The position numbers and the translations under genes were made by a program. Below are positions 34,817 through 64,000 of a stretch of DNA of 64,000 nucleotides, piece after piece. Each line of letters opens with the position of its first letter. The first letter of the stretch is position 1. Location of the stretch: positions 62,001 to 126,000 of IMG/VR virus record IMGVR_UViG_3300028569_002417; one strand, given 5' to 3'. Under the pieces are notes generated by a model that was given only the letters and a program-made list of their open reading frames with translations, was not told the origin of the DNA and did not search any database.

Positions 34817-35608
34817 ATGAATTTGATAAAAAAATGTCGTTATGGACTTATGATTTACAATAACAGCGACATATGGGTTGGTCGCTCTATTGAAAAATAC
34901 GGTGAGTTTTCTGAATCAGAAGTACAAGTTTTTCAAGATATAGTGAAACCCGGCAATGTTGTTCTCAATCTTGGAGCCAATATTGGATGCCACTCTGTTG
35001 CTTTGTCTAGATTGGTTGGACCAAATGGTGTTGTTTTTTCATATGAGCCAGAAAGAAATAATTTCACAACATTGGCTGGCAATATTGCCATAAACAACCT
35101 CAGAAACGTCTATGCCTTTCAAAAAGCAGTTGGTTCAACAAGCGGTCTTATTGCAGTGCCAGAAATCAACATAGAAAAGACAGTTAACTTCGGAGGTCTT
35201 TCTCTTGTTCATGATTACAGTGGTAGCTCACACTATCCAGTTCCACTCATCACACTTGATGAATGTAATTTTATCAAGTGTGATTTAATTAAAATTGATA
35301 TTGAAGGAATGGAAAAATTAGCTTTGCAAGGATCACAAGAAACCATTAAGAAAAACAAACCAATTCTTTATGTTGAAAACGACAGAGAAGAAAAATCTAA
35401 AGATTTAATCGAATACATAAAATCATTGGATTATATTGTTTACAAACACCTTGCTCCTCTTTTTAATCCTAACAATTTTTTTGGTAACAAGGAAAATGTT
35501 TTTGTAAATGAAAATAATGCCTTGATAGTGTCAAGCAACCTTTATTGTCACCATAAAAGCATTGATTCTCCAATTAATGTCAAAAAATTTGCAATGGAGT
35601 TAATTTGA
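34817..35608 (+). CDS. FkbM-family methyltransferase
   Basis: LGANIG.H, EP, LIKIDIEGME, P.LYVEN. Confidence 0.92.
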   Translation: MNLIKKCRYGLMIYNNSDIWVGRSIEKYGEFSESEVQVFQDIVKPGNVVLNLGANIGCHSVALSRLVGPNGVVFSYEPERNNFTTLAGNIAINNLRNVYAFQKAVGSTSGLIAVPEINIEKTVNFGGLSLVHDYSGSSHYPVPLITLDECNFIKCDLIKIDIEGMEKLALQGSQETIKKNKPILYVENDREEKSKDLIEYIKSLDYIVYKHLAPLFNPNNFFGNKENVFVNENNALIVSSNLYCHHKSIDSPINVKKFAMELI

Positions 35609-36498
35609 TTACAGCATTTATTGTTTTTTTAAGTTTAGGTCAAAATGCGCCTGAAACAACAGGACTTCCTTATGATCGCAATGCCAAAAACATTGCGACT
35701 CTCTTCACCATGACAAATGAAGATGGAAGGCTTGAAAACATCCAAATTATGGAAAGTATTTTCAAAGATGGAAGTCTTGGATTCAAATCTGAATCACATC
35801 ATAATAAGTCTTCAAAATACATTTACGAGAGATTAGAATCTGCCGCAAAAGAAGTAGGAACATACGGAACACTTCTTTTTTATGTAAATAGTCATGGAGG
35901 AGGAAGCTGGAAAAATTTTTCAATGACTGCTGCTGGAGGTGATTTCAAATTCAGCAAAGCTCTTCAAGCTATTGCAAAAGGAAACAAAGTGAAAAGACTT
36001 ATTATTTTCATAGACACATGTCACGCAGAAGGAGGAATTCAAGAAGGATTCCAAGAAGGAGGCAAGCAGATTTTGAACATAAGAACAGGTTTGCAAGAAC
36101 TACCTTCAATTTATAAGGTTTCTGACCCAGATAAGTTTTTTGACACAGAAATTACAATTAATTATGGACAAGATAGCGGTTCTTATTCAGAAGCACTGAT
36201 ACTTGCCTCGACAAATGTTAACACATTATCAACAAGAACTATTTTCCCAACAAAAATGAAAGCAACACTTCAAAAAATAAAAAATGAAAAAACAATTACA
36301 GTAGCACAATTCTTAAAGAAATTCGCAGAATCACACAATGACGTTTATCAAAAACCATTATACAAAGTTTTACCAGATGATAAAATTTTGAGTGAACCTT
36401 TGTTTGCTAATGTTGTAAGAGAGATCACGATATTTGACAGAGTTGAAAATAAAAAAATCAATTTACCGAGCAGTTATGTCATTTTGCCTTCTGATTAA
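35605..36498 (+). CDS. Signal-peptide-bearing caspase-like (clan CD) protease
   Basis: Hydrophobic N-terminus; LFYVNSHG and IFIDTCH dyad motifs. Confidence 0.65.
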   Translation: MITAFIVFLSLGQNAPETTGLPYDRNAKNIATLFTMTNEDGRLENIQIMESIFKDGSLGFKSESHHNKSSKYIYERLESAAKEVGTYGTLLFYVNSHGGGSWKNFSMTAAGGDFKFSKALQAIAKGNKVKRLIIFIDTCHAEGGIQEGFQEGGKQILNIRTGLQELPSIYKVSDPDKFFDTEITINYGQDSGSYSEALILASTNVNTLSTRTIFPTKMKATLQKIKNEKTITVAQFLKKFAESHNDVYQKPLYKVLPDDKILSEPLFANVVREITIFDRVENKKINLPSSYVILPSD

Positions 36499-37855
36499 TT
36501 GGTAAGCTTTCTACAACTTCATGGATAAGGTCTTTCCAAGTTGTTTTACAACGAAACAATCTTGCAGATGGATACCAAGGAGTTGTTTCTACATCATCAA
36601 ACCATCGCCAATCACAATGTTTTGCCAGTAAAATCCAAACTGGCTTACCCATGGCTCCACACAAGTGAGCTAGTCCCGTATCAACTGTAATGACCAGATC
36701 AAGACTTTCAATGATGTTGGCTAAGTCTGTAAAGTTTTGTATTTTTTTACTCATGTCGATTACAGAAAAAGATTCAATTCCTTCATTCAAATCAATACTT
36801 CCTTGTGGCCAATCCCTTTTTGTTTTAACGCCTTTCATAAGACTGTAACATTGAACATTTTTACATTCAATCAGTTCTTTCATGGCAATAATTGGCATTG
36901 ATCTTAAAAAATCTCTTGCGTGGTCTGAGTTTCCTCCCCAACATATTCCTATTTTCATTTTACTTTTTGGACATTTTAATTTAATTTTTCCCGTTGACTT
37001 GAAATAAGGCTCGCAAAAAACGTCTTCTGAATTGCATGTTTTGAATATTTTAGGCAAACTGCAAACAGAAATACAGTAATCACTCTTGGGAGGGTCTGGC
37101 CAATTATTATTATTTTGTCTTGATATAACTTCATCGATATCAAAACTATCACGCACCATTTGTGCAATTGGCTCTTGAACCTCACAAATTATTTTACCAA
37201 CAAGTGGACGAATTCTTTTTATAAATCTGGAAAAGAAAATAAAGTCTCCCAACCCTTGCTCGCTATAAATAAGCAATGATTTTTTCTTGATCTTTTGTCC
37301 TTCCCATTCTGGCTGTAAAAACCTTTTCTTGAATCTCGAAGTAATATCATGGGAAAAAAATCTATAATCATAAAGCCTAAATCCTTCCTCATATTCTCCA
37401 CGCCTAAGCAAACTTAACCCTAAGTTGAAATTACTCATGGCATGATTAGGATTTATATTAAGCGATTTTCGATACATTTCTTCAGATTCTTTGTATCTTA
37501 ATACATTTGCAAGAACTACTCCTGCATTATAATAAGGGTCAAGATTTTCTCCCCTTGAGTAGTCAATAGTTTTCATCGCTGTTTCAACAGAATTATCGTG
37601 ATCTCCCATTACGCTGTAAACATGAGTCAAATTAGACCAAATATGCCAATTTGAAGGATCAATTTTTAGAGCCGACTCAAATGTTTCTAATGATTTTTTA
37701 TAATCTTTCAAATTGGTGCAATATGATAGCCCTAAACAGTTTAGCGCCTGAACAGCCATGTGTTCACAAGACCAAATAGCCTCTCCATTCCTTCCTTGAG
37801 AAGTCAAACTAGTGTAATCGGTGTAAAAATCAGACAGTAATTTTTCTAAATGCAT
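36479..37855 (-). CDS. TPR + GT-B (GT9-like) glycosyltransferase
   Basis: TPRs; EQGLGD, IGICW.G, DLVITVDT..AHL.GAMG.P, WRW, PWYPS. Confidence 0.88.
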   Translation of the reverse strand: MHLEKLLSDFYTDYTSLTSQGRNGEAIWSCEHMAVQALNCLGLSYCTNLKDYKKSLETFESALKIDPSNWHIWSNLTHVYSVMGDHDNSVETAMKTIDYSRGENLDPYYNAGVVLANVLRYKESEEMYRKSLNINPNHAMSNFNLGLSLLRRGEYEEGFRLYDYRFFSHDITSRFKKRFLQPEWEGQKIKKKSLLIYSEQGLGDFIFFSRFIKRIRPLVGKIICEVQEPIAQMVRDSFDIDEVISRQNNNNWPDPPKSDYCISVCSLPKIFKTCNSEDVFCEPYFKSTGKIKLKCPKSKMKIGICWGGNSDHARDFLRSMPIIAMKELIECKNVQCYSLMKGVKTKRDWPQGSIDLNEGIESFSVIDMSKKIQNFTDLANIIESLDLVITVDTGLAHLCGAMGKPVWILLAKHCDWRWFDDVETTPWYPSARLFRCKTTWKDLIHEVVESLPINQKAK

Positions 37856-37914
37856 CTGTTTTGTCCTATATAAAATAGTTTTGAACCTAAAAATAAAATG
37901 AAAAGGCAATCTTT

Positions 37915-38142: not shown

Positions 38143-38146
38143 TTAA

Positions 38147-39724
38147 ATGGCTGATATACAGACGCAACTTCCAGTAAAGCTTACAGATAATACAAACACA
38201 GCGGCAATTACAGCTGGAAACGCTCTGAAAGTTGACAACTCAAGCGTTACTCAGCCAGTTAGTGGAACAATAACTGCTGTTCCAACTGGAACCTATACAG
38301 TTGCTGGTACTATATCCGCCACTGTTAGTGGAACACAAACCGTAACTGGTTTAGGTACTGCTGGAACAGCTAATGCAGGAGTCATAACAATTCAAGGCAT
38401 CGCAGGCATGACAGCCTTAGATGTTACAGGAACAGTTGACACAACTGGCAGTACAGTAACTATTGGTAATTCAATTACTGTTGGCGATGGTACAATCACT
38501 GTCGCTAACCCAGTAAACACAGTAACAGTTGCTAACACAGTAGAAACAGTTACTGTTGCGAGCGGTACTATTTCAGTCAATGATGGTACAATCACCGTTG
38601 CCAACCCAGTAAACACGGTAACGGTTGCTAACACAGTAGAAACAGTCACAATTGCTAGTGGTACAGTCACTGTTGCTAGTGGTACTATTTCGGTCAATGA
38701 CGGTACAATAACTGTTGCCAACCCAGTAAATACAGTAACAGTTGCTAACACAGTAGAAACAGTCACAATTGCAAGCGGTACAGTTACTGTTGCGAGCGGT
38801 ACTATTTCGGTCAATGATGGTACAATCACCGTTGCTAACCCAGTAAACACAGTAACGGTTGCCAATACAGTAGAAACGGTCACAGTTGCAAGCGGTACAG
38901 TCACAGTTGCAAGCGGTACAGTCACAGTTGCAAGCGGTACTATTTCGGTCAATGACGGTACAATCACCGTTGCCAACCCAGTAAACACGGTAACGGTTGC
39001 TAACACAGTAGAAACGGTCACAATTGCTAGTGGTACAGTCACTGTTGCTAGTGGTACAGTCACTGTTGCGAGCGGTACTATTTCGGTCAATGATGGTACA
39101 ATCACCGTTGCTAACCCAGTAAACACAGTAACGGTTGCCAATACAGTAGAAACGGTCACAGTTGCAAGCGGTACAGTCACAGTTGCAAGTGGTACTATTT
39201 CGGTTAATGACGGTACAATCACCGTTGCAAACCCAGTAAGCACAGTGACAATTGCAAGCGGTACAGTAACCACTTCGCCTTCTGGAACTCAAACTATAAC
39301 AGGAAGTGGAACTGCTGGAACCGCTGCTGCTGGCGTTGTAAGTATTCAAGGTATCAACAACGCTTACAACTTAAATGTTAGTCTTCTTTCTCAGACTGGA
39401 ATAGTTGTAAATCATGATACTTCTGTTGATGTTGCGAATAGCAGCACTGGCACCGTTTCTTACACAGTTACGGCTGGAAAAACATTTTATCTTAAGGGCA
39501 TTATTGCAAGTTCTTCTGGAGCGCCTTGCAAGGTAATTGTTGATTCTGGAGCAGGTCCAACTGTTTATGGAGTAGGATTCTATTCTGCGGCCATACCATA
39601 TTTGGCAATGAATTTCGTTCAGCCTCCTGCAATATCTGCTGCTACAGTAGTCAGGGTTAAAATTCAGAATAATGCGGGATCGGCACAAACTGTTTATGCA
39701 ACAATTATGGGTGAAGAGAGATAA
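38147..39724 (+). CDS. Thr/Val-rich repeat fibre-like protein
   Basis: AAGGAG SD; TxT repeat core; globular C-terminus. Confidence 0.75.
   Translation: MADIQTQLPVKLTDNTNTAAITAGNALKVDNSSVTQPVSGTITAVPTGTYTVAGTISATVSGTQTVTGLGTAGTANAGVITIQGIAGMTALDVTGTVDTTGSTVTIGNSITVGDGTITVANPVNTVTVANTVETVTVASGTISVNDGTITVANPVNTVTVANTVETVTIASGTVTVASGTISVNDGTITVANPVNTVTVANTVETVTIASGTVTVASGTISVNDGTITVANPVNTVTVANTVETVTVASGTVTVASGTVTVASGTISVNDGTITVANPVNTVTVANTVETVTIASGTVTVASGTVTVASGTISVNDGTITVANPVNTVTVANTVETVTVASGTVTVASGTISVNDGTITVANPVSTVTIASGTVTTSPSGTQTITGSGTAGTAAAGVVSIQGINNAYNLNVSLLSQTGIVVNHDTSVDVANSSTGTVSYTVTAGKTFYLKGIIASSSGAPCKVIVDSGAGPTVYGVGFYSAAIPYLAMNFVQPPAISAATVVRVKIQNNAGSAQTVYATIMGEER
38492..39262 (+). repeat. 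Hierarchical coding repeat array
   Basis: Units TITVANPVN, TVTVANTVE, TVT(V/I)ASG x1-3, TISVNDG; six super-units. Confidence 0.95.
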
Positions 39725-39748: not shown

Positions 39749-39780
39749 AAAAGCCCGCAAAAACACTTGCGGGTTTTTTT
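39749..39780 (+). terminator. Rho-independent terminator
   Basis: AAAAGCCCGCAA-6-TTGCGGGTTTTTTT. Confidence 0.88.
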
Positions 39781-39826: not shown

Positions 39827-40390
39827 ATGGGTGACTTATCAAGAGTTCAAACTTCAATTCCTGTTCAGCTTGTAGATGCAAATGATTTACAGGTTGTTGA
39901 CATTACTACAAGTACGCCTAGCGGTACTGAAGCTGGTGTAGTTGTTCGTAATATACCTAGTGGGACGCAAACTGTAGAGGGAACCGTAACTGCTTCTCCT
40001 AGTGGAACTTACACTGTGGCTGGTGGTGGTTCTGCTGGGACTGCTGCTGCTGGTGTAGTTACGGTTCAGGGTATAGCGAGTGGTGTTTCTGTAGCTGTGG
40101 CTTTAGATAATAGCAGTTATAAAAGTAAAGGCACAAATACATTTACTACATCTGCTCCTAATGGAACAGCTACATCAATAATTGGATCGAATGCTAATCG
40201 AGCATCTTTACTCATTTACAATGCTGGTTCTGCGACAGTTTATCTTGGGAAGTCAGGTAGTGTGACTACTGGCAATGGCGTTCCTTTGTTGCCTAATGCG
40301 AGCATTGAAGACACAGAAAGCACAGATTCTTGGTATGGAATCACTGGTGGAACCACAGGTGATTTAAGGGTAATTGAAACAGCAATATAA
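39827..40390 (+). CDS. Structural protein sharing a module with 38147..39724
   Basis: Shared QT..PV.L.D and SPSGT.T..G.G.AGTAAAGVV..QGI. Confidence 0.7.
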   Translation: MGDLSRVQTSIPVQLVDANDLQVVDITTSTPSGTEAGVVVRNIPSGTQTVEGTVTASPSGTYTVAGGGSAGTAAAGVVTVQGIASGVSVAVALDNSSYKSKGTNTFTTSAPNGTATSIIGSNANRASLLIYNAGSATVYLGKSGSVTTGNGVPLLPNASIEDTESTDSWYGITGGTTGDLRVIETAI

Positions 40391-45083: not shown

Positions 45084-45856
45084 TGGCTATAATCGTAAAA
45101 GGTACTGTCAAGATAGCAAGACCAATTGTTCCAACAGATATTGCTGGTCTTCAACTATGGCTAGATGCTTCTGATTCTACCACTTTATTCCAAAATTCAG
45201 ATGGTACTACGCCTGCAACTGCTGATAGTGACCCAATAGGATATTGGGGAGATAAAAGTGGAAATGGCAACAATGTAATTCAATCTGATGTTTCATTAAA
45301 ACCATCTTTGAAATTGACAATACAGAATAATAAAAACACACTTCGATTTGACGGAACAAATGATAAATTAACTGGAAATTTATCTCCACAATCAAGTGAT
45401 CGCACAATGTTCATTGTTGCTAAAAGAACTAGCACTACATCTGCATGGCGTGGAGCAATTTTACTTAATTCCAATGACATAAATGATCAAACGGGAACAA
45501 CTAAATACATAATACAACAAGCTGGAAATGGAACAAACAGTCTTGGTGGCGGTCGCCCAACTCCTGGATTAGAATATACATATACTGGAAATGGTACTAA
45601 TTATTTTATAATTAGTCAGACAAATACGCTTACTGGATCGGCGGCTAAAATGAACGGTGCATCTGCTGGAAGTGTATCTCATGCATCGACTTCTATTGGG
45701 ACAGGAGTTCAAGTGCGAATAGGTTCTGGCAGACTTTCCAACACTGAAACGTGGTACGGTGATATTGCAGAAGTTATTGTTTATAATTCAGTATTATCAG
45801 CATATAATATAGTATTTTTAGAATCCTACCTCAATACGAAGTGGGGTGTTTACTAA
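45083..45856 (+). CDS. LamG/ConA-like lectin domain protein
   Basis: LQLWLDA.D, W.DKSGNG, FDG.ND, GDIAEVIVYN..LS, YL..KWG. Confidence 0.85.
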   Translation: MAIIVKGTVKIARPIVPTDIAGLQLWLDASDSTTLFQNSDGTTPATADSDPIGYWGDKSGNGNNVIQSDVSLKPSLKLTIQNNKNTLRFDGTNDKLTGNLSPQSSDRTMFIVAKRTSTTSAWRGAILLNSNDINDQTGTTKYIIQQAGNGTNSLGGGRPTPGLEYTYTGNGTNYFIISQTNTLTGSAAKMNGASAGSVSHASTSIGTGVQVRIGSGRLSNTETWYGDIAEVIVYNSVLSAYNIVFLESYLNTKWGVY

Positions 45857-46530
45857 TGAGTGTCATTTCTGGTCCAAATATTGTCATAGATGGATTGATT
45901 TTCCATGCAGATGCTGGAAACACAAAAAGTTATTCTGGTTCAGGAACAACTTGGACTGATTTAAGCGGTAATAGCAGGCACATAACACTTATCAATAGCC
46001 CTACATTTAATTCTGATAGTGTTTTATTTAATGGAAGCAACCATTATAGTGAAAGTGTTATATTCACTCCAAATATTACATCAAAAACAACAATGGCATG
46101 GTGCAAATTAACTTCAATATCACAAACTGCTGGTGGTTTAATTGGAATTATGGGAAGCGGAGGAGAACCTTTTGACTCTATAGTTTATAACGAAACCAGT
46201 AACGGATGGGGTTTTGGTTCAACCGGATTCCAGAGAACAGCATGGTCTGGTGTAAAAGAAACATCGACATCAGCTTGGGTTCATTTAGCAGCAACATATT
46301 CAAATCTAAATTACAATCTATACAGAAACGGTGTCAACATACTTACAACAACACTTTATAATGCTCTAAATTACAACTTTGCTTCTAAAATAATAATGGG
46401 GAAGAGACATGGATCACTTATAGGACCATTAGGCGCATATATTTCTCAAGGAATGGTTTACAGTCGTGCTTTGTCATCAGCAGAAGTTTTGCAGAATTAT
46501 AATTCATTAAAAAGTAGATACAACCTATAA
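45856..46530 (+). CDS. LamG/ConA-like lectin domain protein
   Basis: IV.DGL....DAGN..SY.GSGTTW.DLSGN, W.H.AAT, LY.NG, YSRALS..EV.QNYN. Confidence 0.85.
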   Translation: MSVISGPNIVIDGLIFHADAGNTKSYSGSGTTWTDLSGNSRHITLINSPTFNSDSVLFNGSNHYSESVIFTPNITSKTTMAWCKLTSISQTAGGLIGIMGSGGEPFDSIVYNETSNGWGFGSTGFQRTAWSGVKETSTSAWVHLAATYSNLNYNLYRNGVNILTTTLYNALNYNFASKIIMGKRHGSLIGPLGAYISQGMVYSRALSSAEVLQNYNSLKSRYNL

Positions 46531-46855: not shown

Positions 46856-46917
46856 TGATAACAGACTAAATACAATAAATAAGTTTTCTTTTTGGAAAGT
46901 GAAGAAAAGGAAATAAA

Positions 46918-57400: not shown

Positions 57401-60400
57401 CTATTGAAAGCGGTAACATTGCAAGCGGCGCAATTGGAAATACACATTTGGGGGCTGCGTCCGTAACAAGTGGTGCAGTTCCTAGTGGAACAGTTATTTT
57501 CAATATGGTTGGTGCGAATGCAACAGTTGCTTATAACTTTGCAGATGTCGCATTAGCTTCAGGAAACTTTGCACTCCAGTCTGTAACTGGTGAAAATCTT
57601 GCAGATGGACTTTGGCCAATTCCTACTGCATTTTATGTGTCTGGCGGTATTACCGCTTTCATGTTCAATAACAACTCAATTGTTAGTGGATCAATATCAA
57701 CAACAACCACTTTAATTAGTCAAGGTTATTTTGCAGGTGGATCTACAGGAGCAAATGTTTCAACAACAGACAAAATATTATATTCAACAGACACAACTGC
57801 CGCTCAAACATCTGCCAATCTAAGTCAATCAAGAAATGAATTGGCGGGAATTTCTGATTATACAACTAATGGTTATTTTGCTGGTGGAGCAACATCTTCG
57901 TTTTCTGGACATGTTGCAACAACAGATAAAATTGTATATTCAACAGACACAACTGCCGCTCAAACATCTGCAAATTTAAGTCAAGCAAGACAAGGATTGG
58001 CTGGATGTTCAGGAGAAAGAACAAAAGGATATTTTGCTGGTGGAACTACTCATCAAGTAAACAGCTTAAACACAGCAGACAAGCTAACATATTCAACAGG
58101 CACAACTACCGCACAATCAAGTGCAAACTTAAGTCAAGCAAGATATTACCTTACTGGAATTTCAGAAGGAACAACTAAAGGTTATTTTGCTGGTGGGCAG
58201 AGTAGCACCGTTTTAGTAACGGCAGACAAATTAACATTTTCAAATGATACAACTGCTGCTCAAACAACAGCGGATCTTAGCACGGCAACAGCCTATATTT
58301 CTGGATGTTCTGGCGAAGGAACTAAAGGTTATTTTGCTGGTGGTGGTACATTTGCCATAACAATTAATGCATATAAATTAACATACACAACAGATACAAC
58401 TACCGCTCAAACTACTGCAAATTTAAGTCAAGCAAGAAGAGAATTAGCAGGAATTTCAGAAGGATCAACTGAAGGTTATTTTGCTGGCGGTAACGGTCCT
58501 GTGACAACAACGGATAAGCTATTATTTTCTACTGATACAACTGCTGCACAAACAACCGCTAATTTGAGTCAAGCAAGAAATAGTTTAGCAGGAATTGATG
58601 GCGCACAAAATTATTTAATCATACCTTACCTAGTCACTTCTGGAAAACTAACAACAACAGAAGCCAACGAAATTCGTTTTACAAACTTGGCATCTGGTTC
58701 AGTATTAAGCGGAAATATAGTTTCTGGTGTTGTATTCAGCGATGCAACCACAAATAACTTCTCAAACGCAGGAGTAAGAAGCGGAAATATTGCCTCTGGA
58801 CAAGTTGGTAGAGTTCATTTTGCCAATGAAACAATACTTTCAGGAAATATAGGAAGCGGTGTAATAAGATTCCCAGAATTCTTCGGCGATACTACAACAT
58901 ACACAAATATTGCCAGCGGACAAATTGGGAATGTACATCTTGAATCAATCGATGTTTCACTTCAAACAAAAATGGGATATTTTGCTCCTGTTACATTTTT
59001 TGGTATAACAGGAAATAAATTAAATTATTCCACAGATACAACTTCTTCAATTATAATTTTGAACCAAGCAAGAGTTGCTTTAACTGGAATATCAGAAGGA
59101 TTAACAAAAGGATATTTTGCAGGAGGATATAGTACAGGCGGGACAATTGTTGCAATAACAGAAAAATTCTCATATTCAACAGAAACAACTATTACTCAAG
59201 CAACAGCAAATCTAAGCCAAGCAAGATATCGTTTGGCGGGATGCTCTGGAGAAAGAACAAAAGGTTATTTTGCCGGTGGAACTACTGGAGGATCAGATAT
59301 TGCAACAGCAGACAAATTAACATATTCAACAGACACAACTGTCGCACAAGCAAGCGCAAACTTAAGTCAAGGAAGATTTTACCTTGCTGGAATTTCAGAA
59401 GGATTAACAAAAGGTTATTTTGCTGGTGGAGTATCAATAGCAATCGTTGCAACAGCAGAAAAATTAACATATTCAACAGACACCACAACGGCACAAACAA
59501 CTGCAAATTTAAGCCAAGCAAGATCAGGGGTGGTTGGATGCTCAGGTGAAGGAACAAAAGGTTATTTTGCTGGCGGAGATACAGATTCAGTAGTCACAAC
59601 AGCAGATAAAATAACATATTCAACTGATACGACTGTTGCTCAAACAAGTGCTAATTTAAGTCAAGCAAGATTTTCATTATCAAGTGTATCCCAAGGATCT
59701 ACAAAAGGTTATTTTACAGGAGGAACACTCGATTTTAGTATTATTTATAAAACAGCAGATAAATTAACATATTCAACAGAAACAACTGCTGCTCAAACAA
59801 CAGCAGATTTAAGTGGAGCAAATTATGATTTTGCTGGAATTGATGGTGGCGTGTCTTATTCTCAATTGATTGCAAGCAGCAAGCTTTCATCTGGAACAAT
59901 TGGTCTTACAACAGCAAGTGGACAGAATGCAGCATTCCCATACAATCTCTCAGAAACAGCAGAAATAAATACAAACAGACCAATGTTTGATTATTTCGTT
60001 TTCCAAGAACAGTGTTCAGGCATCAAAGCAGTTTGCATTGCATCTGGAAGCAGAGTTGTAAGGGCACAAAGAGCAAGTGGAATGAGACTTCCAGCAATTG
60101 GCGTTACAAGCGGAACTGTCAACAGCGGAACAATTGGAGCAGTTTACTATTACGGATATGTTGGAAGAACTGGAACATTCGCTCAAAACTCTGGTCTAAA
60201 TAATGGAATTTCTGGATTCCAAGGAAGACCTCTTTATGTCGGATCGGGCGGAAATATCGTTAATCAAAGCGGAATGCGTGGAGCATCCTCTGGCGCACCA
60301 TTCATATCAGGCGACATGCAACAACAAATAGGCATCGCCATGAGCGGAGGACTATTCGTTATGCCAAGTCCAAGAGTTGTAAGATCAGGATTCAGAGGCA

Positions 60401-60426
60401 CATTACCTTATAATCATCCTGCTTAA
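54478..60426 (+). CDS. SG-repeat fibre carrying four 6-bladed Kelch-like propellers (1982 aa)
   Basis: 24 repeats of KGYFAGG-var-ATADKLTYSTDT...ANLSQAR-xx-LAG in 4 groups of 6. Confidence 0.85.
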   Translation: MPISFPSSPSSGQRYEFSFNAWTYNGTFWQSTGSSGQITSGAIGDNVIFSGNIASGSISAFNLASGVGGSSLVLTSGSITSGFIGNDAVTSGNIASGQVGRVQINDYNVGTNLSKIRDGIKGYFAGGSTGDYVATADKLTYSTDTTAAQTTANISQAREQLAGISEGSTKGYFAGGINAGGFIATADKITYSNDTTIAQTTANLSKERQGLAGCSGQGTKGYFAGGSSGALVATADKLTYSTDTTAAQTTANISQAREQLAGISEGSTKGYFAGGRSSLTQYSTTDKILYSTDTTAAQTTANLSQARRQLAGCDGEGKKGYFAGGNGPVATADKLTYSTDITVAQTTANLSQAKNSLAGCSGEGTKGFFAGGTTGATPIATADKITYSTDTTIAQTSANLSQARFNLAGVGNNYSTVFGDNCVFSGNISSSEIGSIHFGFSYPTSGSIKSGNIGDNSVNSGNIGSGQVGRFHISYFNPGNNLALVRGGIKGYFAGGYIAGGVATANKLTYSTDTTTVQATANLSQSRGFLAGCSGEGSKGYFAGGSNDASTALATADIVSYLTDTTAAQTSANLSQARYILAGCSGEKTKGYFAGGNTGAAVATADKLTYSTDTTAAQASANLSQARGYLAGVSEGSTKGYFAGGSTSDESGVALLTADKLTYSTDTTAAQTSANLSQARSGLAGCDGDGIKGYFAGGYTSNYVATSDKLTYSTDTTAAQTSANLSQARLSLAGISEGLTKGYFAGGNIGSSVATADKLTYSTDTTIAQTTANLSQARAQLAGASQEFTSVFGNNSITSGNISSGQIGQFHFLSGVIRTATNIVNSGNFGDSSVNSGNIASGVVSQFNFSDSSIYSDSVRSGNVSTFKFANNAVFSGNISSSNTITTVNLASGGVRSGAFGDNAISSGDILSGRITRDNISSGAFQSFNIASGSISTVKLASGAAVGAFNLASGIVVSGNIASGSIFFTPFIDGAIESGNIASGAIGNTHLGAASVTSGAVPSGTVIFNMVGANATVAYNFADVALASGNFALQSVTGENLADGLWPIPTAFYVSGGITAFMFNNNSIVSGSISTTTTLISQGYFAGGSTGANVSTTDKILYSTDTTAAQTSANLSQSRNELAGISDYTTNGYFAGGATSSFSGHVATTDKIVYSTDTTAAQTSANLSQARQGLAGCSGERTKGYFAGGTTHQVNSLNTADKLTYSTGTTTAQSSANLSQARYYLTGISEGTTKGYFAGGQSSTVLVTADKLTFSNDTTAAQTTADLSTATAYISGCSGEGTKGYFAGGGTFAITINAYKLTYTTDTTTAQTTANLSQARRELAGISEGSTEGYFAGGNGPVTTTDKLLFSTDTTAAQTTANLSQARNSLAGIDGAQNYLIIPYLVTSGKLTTTEANEIRFTNLASGSVLSGNIVSGVVFSDATTNNFSNAGVRSGNIASGQVGRVHFANETILSGNIGSGVIRFPEFFGDTTTYTNIASGQIGNVHLESIDVSLQTKMGYFAPVTFFGITGNKLNYSTDTTSSIIILNQARVALTGISEGLTKGYFAGGYSTGGTIVAITEKFSYSTETTITQATANLSQARYRLAGCSGERTKGYFAGGTTGGSDIATADKLTYSTDTTVAQASANLSQGRFYLAGISEGLTKGYFAGGVSIAIVATAEKLTYSTDTTTAQTTANLSQARSGVVGCSGEGTKGYFAGGDTDSVVTTADKITYSTDTTVAQTSANLSQARFSLSSVSQGSTKGYFTGGTLDFSIIYKTADKLTYSTETTAAQTTADLSGANYDFAGIDGGVSYSQLIASSKLSSGTIGLTTASGQNAAFPYNLSETAEINTNRPMFDYFVFQEQCSGIKAVCIASGSRVVRAQRASGMRLPAIGVTSGTVNSGTIGAVYYYGYVGRTGTFAQNSGLNNGISGFQGRPLYVGSGGNIVNQSGMRGASSGAPFISGDMQQQIGIAMSGGLFVMPSPRVVRSGFRGTLPYNHPA
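54838..59850 (+). repeat. Kelch-like repeat blocks (~54838-55710, 55945-56835, 57721-58600, 58972-59850)
   Basis: Unit about 141-159 nt; repeats counted manually. Confidence 0.9.
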
Positions 60427-61013
60427 AACTTATCAAAAAATATATTGAAACTCATGCTGATTCTGTCTTCAGAAGACCTATTCATCTGAACACTATGCAT
60501 AAGCCAAGAAGGGAATATATAACATCTTCCCGCTATTGCAGGATAAATTAAATTATTTGCAGTAACAATACTAAAATCCTTATAAGTAGCATCAAGCATC
60601 CCCTTCGCAATCAAAGGGGAATGGAAAATAATATTTCCAGAATTTTCAGGTGCCTGTAAATAATAACACCCAGAAAATATGTTGCGTGGATGTGTATGAC
60701 TCGCATTATATGCGCCAGAAGGATTAACATTAACCCAAGAATTATAAATTTTTATTTCTTCAACAATAGTCAAAGATTCACGAATATTTTGAACAAAACC
60801 AGATAAATCACGCTTCAACTCAGAACAAACATGATTATCAAGAAAATTGTCTTGGCTCTGCCAACCACCACCCATATTCGTTTTTTCAACACCAACAGGA
60901 TCAGAAGCCTGTCGGTATCTCGTGTAATCAATTAAATTTTGCCTGTAACCCTGATCATTCAAATCACAAACATATATCGTCGAAGGAAATGCTAACTCAC
61001 ACTTAATCATCAA
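60423..61013 (-). CDS. 2OG-Fe(II) oxygenase (TIGR02466-like)
   Basis: W.N.N, H.H, SG.YY, FPSWL.H.V, RIS.SFN. Confidence 0.88.
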   Translation of the reverse strand: MMIKCELAFPSTIYVCDLNDQGYRQNLIDYTRYRQASDPVGVEKTNMGGGWQSQDNFLDNHVCSELKRDLSGFVQNIRESLTIVEEIKIYNSWVNVNPSGAYNASHTHPRNIFSGCYYLQAPENSGNIIFHSPLIAKGMLDATYKDFSIVTANNLIYPAIAGRCYIFPSWLMHSVQMNRSSEDRISMSFNIFFDKF

Positions 61014-61381
61014 TCATCCAACCACTTTGAAAACTTATATCTCGTCTGGCCACCAACAAATTTCTTTTCAACCTCAAGATCTGAATTCAAAATGCGATAA
61101 TCTGGAATACTCTTAACCTTATACTTTTTCTTCAAAGTCGAATTTTCATCTACATCAACAATAAGCACCACAAACTTATCAAGCTTTTCCTTTACCTCTT
61201 TTTCCTTAAACATTTTCTTCATGGATTGACATGGCGCACACCAAGATGCACCAAAATAAAGGAAAATTTTCTTTTTATCTTTCTTCGCAATCTTAACAGC
61301 CTCATCATAAGATGAGGCTTCCTCTGCCTTAATAAAACTCAATGACAAAAACAATAAAACAAGAACTAAAATTCTAAACAT
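61010..61381 (-). CDS. Thioredoxin-like protein with signal peptide
   Basis: WCAPC, cis-Pro SIP; start MFRILVLVLLFL after GAGG. Confidence 0.85.
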   Translation of the reverse strand: MFRILVLVLLFLSLSFIKAEEASSYDEAVKIAKKDKKKIFLYFGASWCAPCQSMKKMFKEKEVKEKLDKFVVLIVDVDENSTLKKKYKVKSIPDYRILNSDLEVEKKFVGGQTRYKFSKWLDD

Positions 61382-61388
61382 AATCGCC

Positions 61389-62558
61389 TCATTCGTATGA
61401 ATTGCCAGTAGCAAAATCAACATGACGACAACGAACACTTGCATCAACCAACAACTTAAATCCCTTCTCACGCAACTTCTGAGACAAAAAACTATCCTGC
61501 GTGAGATGAGCAGTTGTCACTGTCCAAGGATATTCTGTCTGAAGAAAACATTCAATAGGGAAAAGAGTGAAACCTTGAGCAATAGTGTAAACTTCATGCA
61601 CACCAACATCATCTTTATTCAAAGTCAATGCCTGACGCTTGCCAGCAATAACCTGAATGTGAACACCTTCTGGATATGGGACTTTCTTCACATAATATCC
61701 ACCCAAAACAGCCTTAGGATCACCAATTTCACGGTAACGAGCCAAAAGCCTTTGGAATCCATCAGTAGGTGGGAAAGTATCATCCTCAACAGTCAAAAGC
61801 ATATCGCAACCATCATTCAGGGCAGTCTGGATGGCATCGTTATACGCTTCTGCGGTTGTCCTCCCAAATACATTCAGGAATTTAACCTGAACTCCTGATG
61901 GAATGGCTAGATTTTCCAAAACAGGCAATCTCTCTGCCTTTTCACGAGTTGGAACAACAATTAAAATCTTGACATCACCAACTTCTAGATACTTTTTCTC
62001 AACTTCCCTGATATGGTCCAGCTTTGGAGTCGCTGCAAGATTGATCTGGCGTAGTGCTTCACTGTTACCAACGCCAACCCTTCCAGTCGCCTGAAGATCT
62101 TGCTGCGCTTGTCGATCTAGACGAAGCTTCCAATAGCTTTCCTGAGCATTATCAATTTCTTCTCGTGTATATTTCTTGGGAAAACTTTGATAAATCTTAT
62201 AAAGAGCATCCAATTCTCTTAAAGCGCCTAGCACGGCATAATCTTGTTCTTGAAGGTCAATTCTTTTCAAGTCTGCATCAATCTGATCAATTTCAGTTCC
62301 CTTGTCTTCAAGTTCTTTAATTTGAATTTCGATCCTTCTTTTTCCTAGTTTCGCTCTTTTCAAATTAGCAACTTTTATTTGTATCTCAAGGACACACTGG
62401 CTAAATTGCATTTCAATTGTATCGTGCTGACCAACTACAAATTTTTCAATTACATATGATGTTCTTGGCTGTTGGATCTCAAGAAATGATTGTTCCAATT
62501 CCTCAATAGCTTTTACTGCTTCATTTACTCTTTCATCAATCGTAGTCAATTCGTTCAT
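61389..62558 (-). CDS. Coiled-coil domain fused to GT2-like domain
   Basis: N-terminal helical domain; ILIVVPT, AYN, VEDD, GFTL, QD..L, D..V.C.H. Confidence 0.75.
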   Translation of the reverse strand: MNELTTIDERVNEAVKAIEELEQSFLEIQQPRTSYVIEKFVVGQHDTIEMQFSQCVLEIQIKVANLKRAKLGKRRIEIQIKELEDKGTEIDQIDADLKRIDLQEQDYAVLGALRELDALYKIYQSFPKKYTREEIDNAQESYWKLRLDRQAQQDLQATGRVGVGNSEALRQINLAATPKLDHIREVEKKYLEVGDVKILIVVPTREKAERLPVLENLAIPSGVQVKFLNVFGRTTAEAYNDAIQTALNDGCDMLLTVEDDTFPPTDGFQRLLARYREIGDPKAVLGGYYVKKVPYPEGVHIQVIAGKRQALTLNKDDVGVHEVYTIAQGFTLFPIECFLQTEYPWTVTTAHLTQDSFLSQKLREKGFKLLVDASVRCRHVDFATGNSYE

Positions 62559-62571
62559 TTTTAAGCCTCAT

Positions 62572-62620
62572 TTGAAAAAATAAATCTATTACATTATAAT
62601 GTCAATGACACCATTGTCAA
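62572..62620. promoter_or_regulatory. Overlapping divergent sigma70 promoters sharing a palindromic -10
   Basis: Plus strand TTGAAA-17-TATAAT; minus strand TTGACA-16-TATAAT. Confidence 0.75.
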
Positions 62621-62638
62621 AATAAATGAGATTCAATT

Positions 62639-63292
62639 ATGCCGGGATCATGGGAACTTATCAATCAAAATCGTGTCCTATGTTGCATTTTAACGAGAGA
62701 ATATGCACCAGTTGCATGGGCTTTCGGACTCAGAAACCTGCAAATTCCCGGTGCAGTCACAGCACTCCAAGGAATGCCATATGACCATGCACGAAATACA
62801 GGATGCTTAAAACTACTCGAACTCGGCTGGGAATGGCTATTCTTTCTCGATGACGATGTCATTCCTCCTCCTGATGCAATCATAAAACTAATGTCTCACA
62901 AGAAACCAATCGTAAGTGGCTTGTACTACAGAAGATACGAACCACTTGCCCCTGTAATGTTGAGAGAATCAGAAAATGGTCCTCAATGGATTCAAGAATT
63001 TAATGCTCCTGACCTTCTGGAAGTCGATTATGTAGGAGCAGGATGCCTTCTCATACATCGTGATGTTATCAAACAATTACCTCCACTCAGCAATCGTTGC
63101 CAATGGTTTGAATGGCGATGCGATAGAACTGATCTTCCTCATCTTGAAAAAACAAGCGAAGACTTTACTTTCTGCAAACATGCCAGAAATCATGGATTCA
63201 AAATTTATGTTGATACCAGTGTGCAATGCCGACATGCAGGATTGGGACAAAGTGAAATTGGCGGATTCAAACCATTGGAGATCAGAGCCTGA
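62639..63292 (+). CDS. GT2-like glycosyltransferase
   Basis: ARN, FFLDDD, VSGLY, GAGCLLI, SEDF.FC, D....C.H. Confidence 0.88.
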   Translation: MPGSWELINQNRVLCCILTREYAPVAWAFGLRNLQIPGAVTALQGMPYDHARNTGCLKLLELGWEWLFFLDDDVIPPPDAIIKLMSHKKPIVSGLYYRRYEPLAPVMLRESENGPQWIQEFNAPDLLEVDYVGAGCLLIHRDVIKQLPPLSNRCQWFEWRCDRTDLPHLEKTSEDFTFCKHARNHGFKIYVDTSVQCRHAGLGQSEIGGFKPLEIRA

Positions 63293-64000
63293 TGAAACTT
63301 ACATACTTGCCAACAACTCCAATGAAAAAGTTAAAAATCTGTGTCATATCCAGCACAGTCCTACATTGCCCCCCAAAGGGCTATTCTGGACTAGAAATGC
63401 TGGCTTGGCAAATAGCTGAAGGGCTTACAGCCAAAGGTCATGAAGTAATGCTTGTTGCACCAAGAGGATCAACAAGTAGTTGTGAAATTCATGAAACAAC
63501 ACAATATGAACCAGAAGGACAAGCCTACAGCGGTTATTGGCACAAACTACCAAGCTTTGATGTGATCATCGATCATAGTTGGGAAAAATGGAGCTACATC
63601 CTGAAAATGGAAGGTAAGCTTCCACAACCAATCCTTGGCGTTCTACACGCTCCTGTAGACACTATGTACAGCACAGCACCATCAGTCCCATTCCCATGCT
63701 TTGTTTGCATCAGCAAAGACCAATCAGATGGTTGCTCCGCACACCTGAAAGTCGCTTCCCGTGTCGCTTATAACGGAGTTGATGTTAATTTTTATAAAAA
63801 CACAGGATTAACAAGAAACGACCGTTATCTCTTCCTCGCCAGAATAAGCACAATCAAGGGTCCACATATTGCTGTTGATGTGGCCAATACTTGTAAAATT
63901 GGACTTGATCTCGTAGGAGATGACAGAATCACAGGAGAACCAGAACTTCTCAACAGTATTAAATCTAAATGCTCTGTATCGCCCAATCTTAGGTATGTAG
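63292..64000 (+). CDS. GT4 (GT-B) glycosyltransferase, partial
   Basis: Manual translation MKLTYLPTTPMKKLKICVIS...PPKGYSGLE...GHEV...YNGVD...FLARI...KG; open to the window end. Confidence 0.85.
   Translation, partial: MKLTYLPTTPMKKLKICVISSTVLHCPPKGYSGLEMLAWQIAEGLTAKGHEVMLVAPRGSTSSCEIHETTQYEPEGQAYSGYWHKLPSFDVIIDHSWEKWSYILKMEGKLPQPILGVLHAPVDTMYSTAPSVPFPCFVCISKDQSDGCSAHLKVASRVAYNGVDVNFYKNTGLTRNDRYLFLARISTIKGPHIAVDVANTCKIGLDLVGDDRITGEPELLNSIKSKCSVSPNLRYV

What the first reader, a model, noticed from the sequence alone, without database searches (positions are those of the whole stretch)
34817..64000. Candidate virion 'glycocalyx' system: Ser/Thr-rich fibres with dedicated modifying enzymes
Seen: about 22 kb of fibre genes extremely rich in Ser-Gly and Thr. 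A sulfotransferase-like gene is translationally coupled inside the operon (49452). The cluster is bracketed by FkbM and TPR-GT-B genes on the left and a 2OG oxygenase, two GT2 and one GT4 on the right; GT2-TPR, a GT-A, a second FkbM, a GATase and pyrG lie elsewhere in the window. Known: TPR-fused GTs usually act on proteins; FkbM enzymes and sulfotransferases decorate glycans; Ser-Gly is the eukaryotic proteoglycan attachment dipeptide; giant viruses glycosylate their fibrils. Inference: the phage builds methylated/sulfated glycans on its fibres for shielding, adhesion or host mimicry.
Basis: inference. Interest (0 to 1): 0.8.

Follow-up and report, generated by a model that had tools for sequence, protein, structure and literature searches.

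The report
Phage fibre genes beside glycan-enzyme island
An uncultured freshwater T4-like phage keeps a sulfotransferase gene inside its tail-fibre operon and a large island of sugar-adding, methylating and sulfating enzymes next to it; this suggests, but does not prove, that the phage decorates its own fibres, while the Ser-Gly richness itself is just a structural repeat.

Summary
Window 38147-60426 encodes about 22 kb of fibre proteins. Ser-Gly is 2.3-3.6 times over expectation in the five large ones. 49452-50030 is a true sulfotransferase fold. FkbM, TPR-GT9-like, 2OG oxygenase, two GT-A paralogues and a GT4 flank the module.

Ser-Gly dipeptides recur at multiples of five residues, as part of an ordered repeat, and the proteoglycan-type motif is absent. 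The same repeat occurs in a 45-kb cyanopodovirus with no annotated glycosyltransferase. The proteoglycan analogy therefore fails.

Two new facts favour a link between fibres and enzymes:
- The enzyme set continues past the window as an island of about 13 kb: a second GT4, five or more methyltransferase domains, two GT25, a second sulfotransferase and a second TPR-GT9. Its four-gene core lies beside such fibres in all 20 related contigs with enough flank, in three arrangements.
- The 192-aa sulfotransferase belongs to a family that sits next to fibre-like genes of unrelated repeat types.

Against a link, the cassette has sigma-70-type (early-looking) promoters and LPS-core-type GT families. Fibre modification is my best reading (about 0.4); remodelling of the host envelope is the main rival (about 0.3).

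The parts
34817..35608 (+). FkbM-family SAM methyltransferase (263 aa)
   Evidence: Pfam Methyltransf_21 8.6e-17; TIGR01444 6e-23; no TM-like segment
35605..36498 (+).
   Evidence: Pfam 7.4e-06, 26.2 bits against a cut-off of 21.4
36479..37909 (-). TPR repeats (about residues 55-180) fused to a GT9-like (heptosyltransferase-like) GT-B domain
   Evidence: TPR_1 1e-12 and Glyco_transf_9 6.7e-06. The C-terminal part matches GT9 clusters in the Atlas at 0.97. Weak WaaC hits. No close relative in IMG/VR other than itself.
38147..39724 (+). 525-aa Thr/Val beta-repeat structural protein, followed by an intrinsic terminator at 39754-39773
   Evidence: Translation shows ordered T/V repeats; Thr 21%; terminator
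39827..40390 (+). 187-aa protein at the head of the first fibre operon, preceded by a T4-late-like ATAAATA motif
   Evidence: 98% identical in L016
40410..45083 (+). 1557-aa fibre with pentapeptide-periodic SG repeats
   Evidence: 129 SG against 42 expected; spacing 5 or 10 in 91 of 128 gaps; sequence
45083..45856 (+). 257-aa virion structural protein with a weak ConA/LamG-like C-terminus
   Evidence: phrog_10356 4.5e-24; Laminin_G_3 sub-threshold
45841..46530 (+). 229-aa LamG/ConA-like lectin-fold protein
   Evidence: Laminin_G_3 1e-15; phrog_24074 and phrog_8510 virion proteins
46541..46855 (+). 104-aa protein, conserved in relatives
   Evidence: 74% identical in L024
46918..49452 (+). 844-aa SG-repeat fibre at the head of the second fibre operon (ATAAATA motif at 46875)
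   Evidence: 81 SG against 23 expected; tail-fibre PHROGs
49452..50030 (+). Compact 192-aa PAPS-type sulfotransferase, with its start overlapping the stop of the upstream fibre gene
   Evidence: Motifs GTYRSGTS and R107-x7-S115 are conserved. Profile against PDB sulfotransferases 1e-9. AF2 pLDDT 94. Foldseek top hits are olefin synthase/CurM ST, Stf9 and TPST1/2. Family context next to fibre-like genes.
50033..52213 (+). 726-aa fibre with a conserved N-terminus (begins MAQTHHYLFD) and SG repeats. Its homologue follows the sulfotransferase in the two close-relative contexts read.
52230..54464 (+). 744-aa SG-repeat fibre
   Evidence: 84 SG against 23 expected; tail-fibre PHROGs down to 2.5e-40; SG positions are the invariant columns; the AF2 monomer is uninformative
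54478..60426 (+). 1982-aa fibre with SG repeats plus many copies of a ~47-aa Thr-rich ordered repeat
   Evidence: only weak Kelch-like PDB hits; repeat-copy variation in lake metagenomes
60423..61013 (-). 2OG-Fe(II) oxygenase (PF13759 / TIGR02466 family)
   Evidence: 1e-23; 3.6e-31
61010..61471 (-).
   Evidence: Thioredoxin 2.9e-15; two TM-like windows
61389..62558 (-). 389-aa protein whose C-terminal half is a phage-type GT-A (GT2/Anp1-like) domain
   Evidence: phrog_12406 glycosyltransferase 1.9e-4; Atlas neighbours are viral GT2 clusters; paralogue of 62639-63292 at 9e-11
62559..62638 (.). Divergent intergenic region with two near-consensus sigma-70-type promoters (12/12 on the minus strand, 11/12 on the plus strand)
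   Evidence: conserved in L016 and L018
62639..63292 (+). 217-aa phage-type GT-A (GT2/Anp1-like), first gene of the conserved four-gene cassette
   Evidence: Anp1 6e-4, sub-threshold; Atlas 0.97-0.99 to viral GT2/Anp1 clusters; conserved at 60-100% identity in 28 of 29 loci (the 29th begins inside the GT4)
63292..64000 (+). N-terminal 236 aa of a 352-aa GT4 glycosyltransferase. The island continues for about 9.5 kb beyond the window.
   Evidence: Full length in L017: Glycos_transf_1 4.6e-19 and Glyco_transf_4 1.6e-06

Best explanation
The window is part of a 225-kb uncultured freshwater T4-like myovirus.

The fibre module. 38147-60426 is its late fibre module. Five long fibres are built from an ordered five-residue-periodic repeat (hydrophobic-x-Ser-Gly-x, four units of about 20 aa). 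Ser-Gly richness is therefore a structural feature, probably the turns of a beta-rich, likely oligomeric shaft (inferred).

The enzymes. Inside the operon sits a compact PAPS-type sulfotransferase. It belongs to a family that recurs next to fibre-like genes whatever their repeat type. Immediately to the right lies an island of about 13 kb encoding enzymes that, apart from the thioredoxin, are predicted to be soluble:
- GT-A x2, GT4 x2, GT25 x2 and a small GT2;
- a TPR-GT9-like protein, in addition to the one on the left flank;
- five or more SAM-methyltransferase domains;
- a second sulfotransferase, a 2OG oxygenase and a thioredoxin.
Its four-gene core (GT-A, GT4, GT4, triple methyltransferase) stays beside the fibres in related phages.

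Proposed mechanism (inferred, not shown). In the infected cell's cytoplasm these enzymes build a short methylated, possibly sulfated, glycan on the phage's own fibre or other surface proteins. The TPR-GTs would recognise the protein. The operon-encoded sulfotransferase would act on the fibre or its glycan as it is made. The nearest working analogies are Ser-heptosylation of beta-helical autotransporter adhesins by WaaC-like TibC/Aah, the TPR-fused flagellin glycosyltransferase FlmG, and mycobacteriophage virion glycosylation.
For: - T4-like identity: gp15, sheath, tube, gp55-like sigma, baseplate, RNR and gp46/47-like genes. Contig identity.
- Sulfotransferase fold and PAPS-binding motifs, with start/stop overlap inside the operon.
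- Homologues at 23-65% identity lie directly beside a non-SG repeat fibre (L003), SG fibres (L005-L007), a collagen-like fibre (L008), and other Ser/Thr/Gly-rich proteins (L009, L125, L127). That is 7 of 9 informative contexts.
- Island content: GT4 x2, MT x3 genes, GT25 x2, Sulfotransfer_3 at 2.9e-17, second TPR-GT9-like, GT2. No TM-like segments except in the thioredoxin and one weak window in the distant second FkbM (22883-23515). No flippase-, polymerase- or ligase-like gene in the roughly 84 kb examined.
- The core cassette is conserved in 29 IMG/VR loci (60-100% identity). It adjoins classifier-positive SG fibres in 20 of the 22 loci with upstream flank; the other two carry weaker SG-enriched fibres. 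The three arrangements are tandem, separated by a minus-strand block, and divergent.
- In the most distant relatives the other side of the cassette carries 1700-2300-aa proteins with 5 to 17 poly-Thr/Ser/Pro linkers.
- Control: the island's GT2_227 has homologues in about 55 other viral contigs. Each stands alone with no SG fibre nearby.
- Precedents: TibC heptosylates Ser in the beta-helix of TibA, including an N-S-G-G site, and resembles WaaC (PMC4358343). FlmG (PMC7591256). Virion glycosylation in mycobacteriophages (cited in PMC12619734).
Against: - No direct evidence of any modification.
- The right-hand cassette has its own sigma-70-type promoters. T4-late-like ATAAATA motifs precede the fibre operons but not the GT genes. 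This fits early genes better than virion maturation.
- GT9, GT25, GT4 and GT2 are the families typical of LPS-core synthesis. Comparable islands in large cyanomyoviruses are usually read as host cell-wall modification (PMC12801897).
- The 29 syntenic loci are one lineage, so adjacency may be inherited rather than selected.
- SG-repeat fibres exist in phages where I found no GT.
- The left-flank TPR-GT9 has no detectable relatives in IMG/VR.
- The SG-fibre structure could not be modelled (pLDDT 40), so exposure of the Ser residues is unknown.
Confidence: 0.4

Rival explanations
1. Host-envelope remodelling. The GT/MT/ST island is expressed early from host-type promoters. It rebuilds the infected cell's LPS core or another surface glycan, for example to block superinfection or stop progeny re-adsorbing. 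It lies next to the fibre genes only because both occupy the flexible part of T4-like genomes.
For: Near-consensus sigma-70 promoters at 62559-62638, conserved in close relatives. GT9-, GT25-, GT4- and GT2-type families, with the best weak hits to LPS heptosyltransferases. A NoeE-like weak hit for the second sulfotransferase. The published reading of similar cyanomyovirus islands (PMC12801897). Soluble GTs are also what inner-leaflet core synthesis uses.
Against: It does not explain a sulfotransferase overlapping the stop codon of a fibre gene, nor why that family follows fibre-like genes of different kinds. It does not explain two TPR-fused GTs. No sugar-nucleotide, lipid-carrier, flippase or ligase genes were seen in about 84 kb. 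Cassette-fibre adjacency survives three rearrangements.
Confidence: 0.3
2. No common target. The region is a mosaic of independently acquired accessory genes with unrelated substrates (small molecules, host proteins, nucleotides). Only the operon-embedded sulfotransferase has anything to do with fibres.
For: Accessory genes vary between relatives: 2OG, thioredoxin, GTA389, MT234/232, GT25, ST263 and TPR-GT9b come and go. GT2_227 occurs alone in many phages. The left flank is unique to this genome. A caspase-like gene and a thioredoxin are interspersed.
Against: The four-gene core is invariant and tightly packed with overlapping or near-abutting genes. The concentration of about 16 glycan-type enzymes in 13 kb is hard to see as unrelated.
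Confidence: 0.15
3. The 192-aa sulfotransferase-like protein is not an enzyme here. It would be a fibre assembly or attachment factor that reuses the fold, sitting where tail-fibre chaperone genes usually sit.
For: It lies immediately downstream of a fibre gene with start/stop overlap. It is about 100 residues shorter than characterised sulfotransferases. Pfam is sub-threshold for this member.
Against: Both PAPS-binding motifs are invariant or nearly so across 26 members at 21-65% identity, as expected for a working nucleotide site. Relatives pass Sulfotransfer_3.
Confidence: 0.07
4. DNA hypermodification. The glycosyltransferases and methyltransferases decorate modified bases in phage DNA, as T4 glucosyltransferases do.
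For: The phage is T4-like. Early-type promoters. pyrG, RNR, a GATase and a second FkbM sit in the nucleotide-metabolism block. Phage GTs that build glycans on DNA are known (Pyle et al. 2024, cited in PMC12619734).
Against: TPR fusions, sulfotransferases, GT25 and GT9 types and about 16 enzymes are far more than any known DNA glycan needs. No hydroxymethylase was seen in the part examined. The island is linked to fibres, not to replication genes.
Confidence: 0.05

Closest known systems
Bacterial autotransporter heptosyltransferases (TibC/Aah) acting on TibA/AIDA-I
   Same: A WaaC-like GT-B enzyme modifies many Ser residues laid out periodically on a beta-solenoid adhesin, including Ser in an S-G context (PMC4358343). 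Here there are GT9/WaaC-like domains and adhesin-like fibres with periodic, invariant SG.
   Different: The phage enzymes carry TPR domains. The TibC iron-finger and dodecamer were not tested. The fibres are phage tail fibres, not secreted passengers, and their fold is unresolved. No modification has been shown.
Mycobacteriophage virion glycosylation (Freeman et al. 2023, as cited in PMC12619734)
   Same: Phage-encoded glycosyltransferases beside structural genes, proposed to coat virion proteins with glycans.
   Different: There the targets are capsid and tail-tube C-termini in siphoviruses of Actinobacteria, with two to a few GTs. Here it is a T4-like myovirus with about 16 enzymes including sulfotransferases, with fibres as the candidate target and no experimental data.
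Cell-wall/LPS modification islands of large cyanomyoviruses (P-SSM2, S-SCSM1, S-SCSM2R)
   Same: Large T4-like aquatic phages with many GT2, GT4 and GT25-type genes clustered in a flexible region (PMC12801897).
   Different: Those islands include sugar-nucleotide epimerases and KDO genes and are read as acting on the host surface. This one lacks such genes in the part examined. It contains sulfotransferases and TPR-GTs and is tied to the fibre module. The best cultured-phage match for the sheath is only about 35% identical.
TPR-fused protein O-glycosyltransferases (FlmG of Caulobacter, OGT/SPINDLY, cyanobacterial Ogt on pilin)
   Same: An N-terminal TPR array plus a C-terminal GT-B domain. These act in the cytoplasm on filament-forming proteins (PMC7591256; bioRxiv 10.1101/2021.07.06.449578).
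   Different: The catalytic domain here is GT9-like, not GT41 or FlmG-type. The only sequence similarity to OGT is in the TPRs.
PAPS-dependent sulfotransferases (CurM/olefin synthase ST, mycobacterial Stf, TPST1/2)
   Same: Fold, 5'-phosphosulfate loop and 3'-phosphate motif.
   Different: About 190 aa against 270-390 aa, lacking most of the acceptor-binding insertions. A family seen only on short metagenomic contigs, mostly beside fibre-like genes. Acceptor unknown.
Pentapeptide-repeat (Rfr-fold) proteins
   Same: Strict five-residue periodicity with about 20 aa per four units. The weak best PDB hits are designed or natural pentapeptide solenoids.
   Different: No Pfam Pentapeptide hit. The consensus is h-x-S-G-x, not A(D/N)LxX. 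The hits are not significant (E = 0.03-0.7).

Membership tests
PAPS-dependent sulfotransferase superfamily (49452-50030) | 5'-phosphosulfate-binding loop (GxxRSGT[ST]-type P-loop after strand 1) | tested here: met
   GTYRSGTS at residues 10-17. G10 and G15 are invariant; R13, T16 and S17 are at least 90% conserved in 26 members.
PAPS-dependent sulfotransferase superfamily (49452-50030) | 3'-phosphate-binding motif (Arg ... Ser, R-x7-S) | tested here: met
   R107 is invariant and S115 is at least 90% conserved. The region aligns to the same region of Stf1 and the olefin synthase ST.
PAPS-dependent sulfotransferase superfamily (49452-50030) | Sulfotransferase alpha/beta fold | tested here: met
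   AF2 pLDDT 94, pTM 0.91. 20 of the top 20 Foldseek PDB hits are sulfotransferases, query-normalised TM-score 0.43-0.65.
PAPS-dependent sulfotransferase superfamily (49452-50030) | Passes the curated Pfam threshold | tested here: not met
   Sulfotransfer_1 scores 15.9 bits against a cut-off of 22. Relatives P0010, P0011 and P0014 do carry Sulfotransfer_3.
PAPS-dependent sulfotransferase superfamily (49452-50030) | Sulfuryl transfer from PAPS to an acceptor | not testable with these tools
   Needs an enzyme assay.
Eukaryote-type proteoglycan (GAG) attachment | Ser-Gly in an acidic SGxG context within a flexible region | tested here: not met
   0-1 [DE]..SGxG per fibre. Acidic residues are 2-6%. 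SG sits in an ordered five-residue repeat.
Eukaryote-type proteoglycan (GAG) attachment | Xylosyltransferase or linkage-region enzymes | tested here: not met
   No such family among the Pfam hits of the window or the island.
BAHT-autotransporter type solenoid Ser-glycosylation | WaaC-like GT-B catalytic domain | tested here: met
   Glyco_transf_9 scores 26 bits against a cut-off of 22. GT9 clusters at 0.97 in the Atlas. The match covers only the C-terminal lobe in HMM searches.
BAHT-autotransporter type solenoid Ser-glycosylation | Iron-finger (four-Cys) motif and dodecameric ring | not tested
   The phage proteins have TPRs in its place; oligomeric state is unknown.
BAHT-autotransporter type solenoid Ser-glycosylation | Acceptor is a beta-solenoid with surface Ser at regular positions | tested here: inconclusive
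   Periodicity and invariance of SG are shown. The 3D model is unusable (pLDDT 40).
Phage virion glycosylation (mycobacteriophage type) | GT genes next to or within the virion structural genes | tested here: met
Phage virion glycosylation (mycobacteriophage type) | Glycan detected on virion proteins | not testable with these tools
   Needs virions and mass spectrometry.
Host LPS/cell-wall modification island (cyanomyovirus type) | LPS-type GT families | tested here: met
   GT9-like, GT25 x2, GT4 x2 and GT2
Host LPS/cell-wall modification island (cyanomyovirus type) | Sugar-nucleotide or KDO biosynthesis genes alongside | tested here: not met
   None in window 1-64000, L017 or L061. The remaining ~140 kb of the genome was not examined.
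T4-like myoviruses | gp15, sheath, tube, baseplate, gp55-type sigma and gp46/47-like genes | tested here: met
Pentapeptide-repeat family (PF00805) | Five-residue periodicity | tested here: met
Pentapeptide-repeat family (PF00805) | Family HMM match / A(D/N)LxX consensus | tested here: not met
   No Pfam hit. PDB hits are not significant.

The most novel reading that the evidence does not exclude
Tail fibres of an abundant freshwater phage lineage carry a methylated and sulfated glycan, or are directly sulfated. The modification would be installed by a fibre-operon-embedded mini-sulfotransferase family together with a conserved GT-A/GT4/GT4/triple-methyltransferase cassette. This would be the first sulfated virion component known in bacteriophages and a new layer of host-range or adhesion control.
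Probability: 0.2. Interest if true: 0.85.

Novelty: new variant of a known kind. Interest (0 to 1): 0.6.

Why it matters
Virion glycosylation is established for giant viruses and a few mycobacteriophages but not for T4-like phages of aquatic bacteria. Sulfation of a phage particle has, to my knowledge and in the literature search here, not been described.

This phage lineage is common in lakes, estuaries and drinking water, and reaches a contig depth of about 185 in one lake metagenome. If its fibres are decorated, that would change how receptor binding, host range, particle stickiness and grazing or immune recognition are modelled for environmental phages.

It would also give a function to the many orphan glycosyltransferase islands of large phages. 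Even without that, the fibre-linked ~190-aa sulfotransferase family is a concrete and cheaply testable lead.

Tried and rejected
- Nucleotide search of the fibre module and the left half against GenBank phages: nothing close, only an RNR fragment.
- tblastn of the sulfotransferase against cultured phages: no match.
- AF2 monomer of the 744-aa SG fibre with a 6-row alignment: pLDDT 40, unusable. No fold search was done, and the solenoid idea rests on periodicity only.
- PDB sequence searches of the SG fibre and of the 47-aa repeat: only non-significant pentapeptide-solenoid and Kelch hits.
- T4 late promoter TATAAATA: 5 hits against 4.5 expected, so no enrichment. The shorter ATAAATA lies before both fibre operon heads, but a late consensus could not be defined rigorously.
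- Related loci for the left-flank TPR-GT9: only the contig itself. Related loci for p187 gave no informative left flanks.
- Reads: only assembled contigs were available, without strand or timing. RNA runs hold scattered fragments of both fibre and enzyme genes that may be DNA carry-over, so expression timing stays unresolved.
- NCBIfam gave only sub-threshold generic GT4 and heptosyltransferase hits, with no specific function.
- The proteoglycan analogy was rejected.
- The mucin-like reading of the window's own fibres was rejected, because Thr sits in ordered repeats. True poly-Thr/Ser/Pro linkers do occur in neighbouring giant proteins of relatives.

Full report
WHAT THE WINDOW IS
The window carries T4-type genes: a tail sheath stabiliser, sheath, two tube paralogues, a gp55-like sigma factor, a baseplate protein, RNR, CTP synthase, gp46/47-like nuclease subunits and a Dda-like helicase. 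It equals positions 62001-126000 of IMG/VR contig UViG_3300028569_002417, which is 225.5 kb. No cultured phage is close; the sheath is about 35% identical at best. Nearly identical sequence is held by many lake, estuary and drinking-water metagenomes, with a contig depth of about 185 in one lake run.

CHECKING THE OBSERVATION
- Nine + strand ORFs fill 38147-60426.
- The five large ones hold 129, 81, 39, 84 and 79 Ser-Gly dipeptides against 42, 23, 15, 23 and 34 expected from composition. Thr reaches 21% in 38147-39724 and 13% in 54478-60426.
- FkbM (34817-35608), a TPR plus GT9-like protein (36479-37909, minus strand) and a 2OG oxygenase (60423-61013) are confirmed.
- 61010-61471 is a thioredoxin with a hydrophobic N-terminus, not a glycosyltransferase.
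- 61389-62558 and 62639-63292 are paralogues (E = 9e-11) of a phage-specific GT-A (GT2/Anp1-like) family.
- A GT4 starts at 63292 and leaves the window.
- A caspase-like gene (35605-36498) sits between FkbM and the TPR-GT.
- 'GT2-TPR' at 11422-12399 is borderline.

WHY THE FIBRES ARE SER-GLY AND THR RICH
- The spacing between successive SG dipeptides is 5 or 10 residues in most cases, and pair distances peak at every multiple of five. The local consensus is hydrophobic-x-S-G-x (sequences).
- In an alignment of homologues down to 32% identity, the SG positions make up most of the invariant columns within the repeat region.
- The acidic SGxG motif of proteoglycan attachment occurs 0-1 times per protein.
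- Thr-richness comes from an ordered T/V repeat in 38147-39724 and from a ~47-aa repeat in 54478-60426.
- The SG repeat matches tail-fibre PHROGs. By tblastn it also matches fibres of T7-like cyanopodoviruses and of roseophages, Arthrobacter, Marinitoga and Terrisporobacter phages.
- Of these, P-GSP1 (45 kb) has no annotated glycosyltransferase.
- SG is therefore a structural repeat element. The proteoglycan analogy does not hold.
- The 3D fold is unresolved. PDB hits to pentapeptide solenoids are not significant and the AF2 monomer failed (pLDDT 40).

THE SULFOTRANSFERASE
- Pfam alone is sub-threshold for 49452-50030.
- An exhaustive search found 36 relatives, mostly about 190 aa. Their alignment conserves a GxxRSGT[ST] loop and an R-x7-S motif.
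- The family profile hits solved sulfotransferases at 1e-9: Stf1, the olefin synthase and CurM ST domains, and TPST1/2.
- The AF2 model is confident (pLDDT 94). Its best structural matches are all sulfotransferases.
- The start codon overlaps the stop codon of the 844-aa fibre gene, and the next fibre gene starts 3 bases after its stop codon (2-nt gap).

CONTEXT OF THE SULFOTRANSFERASE FAMILY
- In the two close-relative contexts read, the gene is followed by a homologue of 50033-52213 with the same N-terminus. In L003/L004 the neighbouring fibres use a different, non-SG repeat.
- More distant members sit directly upstream of a collagen-like fibre (L008). Others sit downstream of an 854-aa Ser/Thr/Gly-rich protein (L009), or upstream of a conserved ~190-aa Ser/Thr/Gly-rich partner (L009, L125, L127).
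- Two contexts show no fibre: the P0010 contig and L124. Two others are too short to judge.
- The link is thus to fibre-like genes in general, not to SG.

- Beyond the window (L017) follow, in order: the GT4, two methyltransferases, a second GT4, a 540-aa protein with three methyltransferase domains, two GT25, a canonical sulfotransferase (Sulfotransfer_3 2.9e-17), a second TPR-GT9-like protein and a small GT2.
- After these come a UvsW-like helicase, an exonuclease and two collagen-repeat proteins.
- None of these enzymes has a membrane-like segment except the thioredoxin.
- No sugar-nucleotide, lipid-carrier, flippase or ligase genes were seen in the roughly 84 kb examined.

CO-OCCURRENCE
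- A search with the GT4 found 29 IMG/VR loci at 60-100% identity.
- In every locus that extends far enough, the core GT-A/GT4/GT4/triple-methyltransferase cassette is present. In 20 of the 22 loci with upstream flank it lies next to classifier-positive SG-periodic fibres. The other two (L018, L032) carry weaker SG-enriched fibres.
- There are three arrangements: same-strand tandem, separated by the minus-strand 2OG/(thioredoxin)/GT-A block, and divergent.
- In the most distant members the other side of the cassette carries 1700-2300-aa RCC1-like proteins with 5 to 17 poly-Thr/Ser/Pro linkers.
- As a control, the island's small GT2 has homologues in about 55 other viral contigs. There it stands alone with no SG fibre nearby.
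- Caveat: the 29 loci are one lineage, so adjacency may partly reflect descent.

EXPRESSION SIGNALS
- The 80-bp gap at 62559-62638 holds a 12/12 and an 11/12 sigma-70 consensus promoter pointing into the two enzyme blocks. These are the best two in 17 kb, and they are conserved in close relatives.
- T4-late-like ATAAATA motifs lie in the intergenic regions before the two fibre operon heads (39827, 46918), but not before the enzyme genes.
- The full TATAAATA is not enriched.
- This favours early expression of the cassette. That fits host- or DNA-directed roles better, though early enzymes can persist.
- Public RNA runs gave no usable timing or strand information.

INTERPRETATION
The idea that this phage modifies its fibres remains the best single reading (about 0.4).
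- It rests on five points: the operon-embedded, evidently functional sulfotransferase and its family-wide fibre association; the TPR-fused GTs; the predicted-soluble, export-free enzyme set; the rearrangement-resistant adjacency of the core cassette to fibres; and Thr/Ser/Pro-linker giants in relatives.
- A good mechanistic precedent is TibC/Aah. This WaaC-like enzyme heptosylates periodically placed Ser residues on beta-helical adhesins, including an N-S-G-G site (PMC4358343). Others are FlmG and cyanobacterial Ogt and mycobacteriophage virion glycosylation (cited).
- The main rival (about 0.3) is remodelling of the host LPS core or surface. It is supported by the promoters, the GT families and the usual reading of cyanomyovirus islands.
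- Lesser rivals are a mosaic without a common target, a non-catalytic chaperone role for the small sulfotransferase, and DNA hypermodification.

NOVELTY
Phage virion glycosylation and phage GT islands are known kinds. Three things appear new: the fibre-linked mini-sulfotransferase family, the conserved cassette tied to SG fibres, and the possibility of a sulfated virion. No relevant paper was found. I rate this a new variant of a known kind, interest 0.6.

Noticed in passing
window 35605-36498: A caspase-like (Peptidase_C14) gene sits between the FkbM methyltransferase and the TPR-GT9 gene. Its role is unknown; it could be a processing protease or defence-related.
   Followed up: no
L061 982-7173 (contig 138348-144539, about 12 kb right of the window): Two large collagen-triple-helix repeat proteins (806 and 1248 aa; Pfam Collagen 2.5e-90 and 3.5e-103) lie just beyond the enzyme island. 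The island also holds two GT25 genes and a 2OG oxygenase. This combination recalls collagen hydroxylation and glycosylation.
   Followed up: partly
L033 13716-20672; L037 13885-20685; L027 11539-16737; L028: In distant relatives the GT cassette is flanked by 1700-2300-aa RCC1-like repeat proteins with 5 to 17 poly-Thr/Ser/Pro linkers. These are true mucin-like tracts, unlike the window's own fibres.
   Followed up: partly
L009 3183-3758; L125 1465-2022; L127 1479-2036: Distant members of the mini-sulfotransferase family are each followed by a conserved ~190-aa Ser/Thr/Gly-rich protein. This looks like a second recurrent gene pair.
   Followed up: partly
window 50033-50075 and homologues in L003-L007: The N-terminus of the fibre downstream of the sulfotransferase (begins MAQTHHYLFD) is almost invariant, even where the rest of the fibre and the sulfotransferase have diverged to 48-65% identity. 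It contains a Tyr near an Asp; whether this is a modification or docking site is unknown.
   Followed up: no
window 59236-59787: In lake and estuary metagenomes this part of the 47-aa repeat region shows 5-6 times higher summed contig depth. It also shows many skip or go-back joints (for example 159, 168 and 321 bases). This indicates repeat collapse and/or repeat-copy variation, whereas the adjacent enzyme genes assemble as single contigs with about 2% differences.
   Followed up: partly
window 45083-45856 and 45841-46530: Two overlapping ORFs match consecutive C-terminal parts of much larger PHROG virion proteins and both have LamG-like ends. They may be a split or frameshifted gene, or tandem paralogues (three tandem copies occur in L033).
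   Followed up: no
window 30368-30450: A tandem repeat of GCACCACCGGGAGCAGGTCCA-like units lies upstream of the gp47-like gene. It would encode a Pro/Gly-rich stretch if the ORF is extended.
   Followed up: no
L017 19546-20229 and L063-L115: The small GT2 at the far end of the island has homologues at 31-75% identity in about 55 diverse viral contigs. There it occurs without the other island genes, so it is a widespread solitary phage glycosyltransferase of unknown role.
   Followed up: partly
window 39754-39773: A strong GC-rich hairpin followed by a T-run comes right after the 525-aa T/V-repeat protein gene. This suggests the gene is transcribed as a separate, probably abundant, unit.
   Followed up: no
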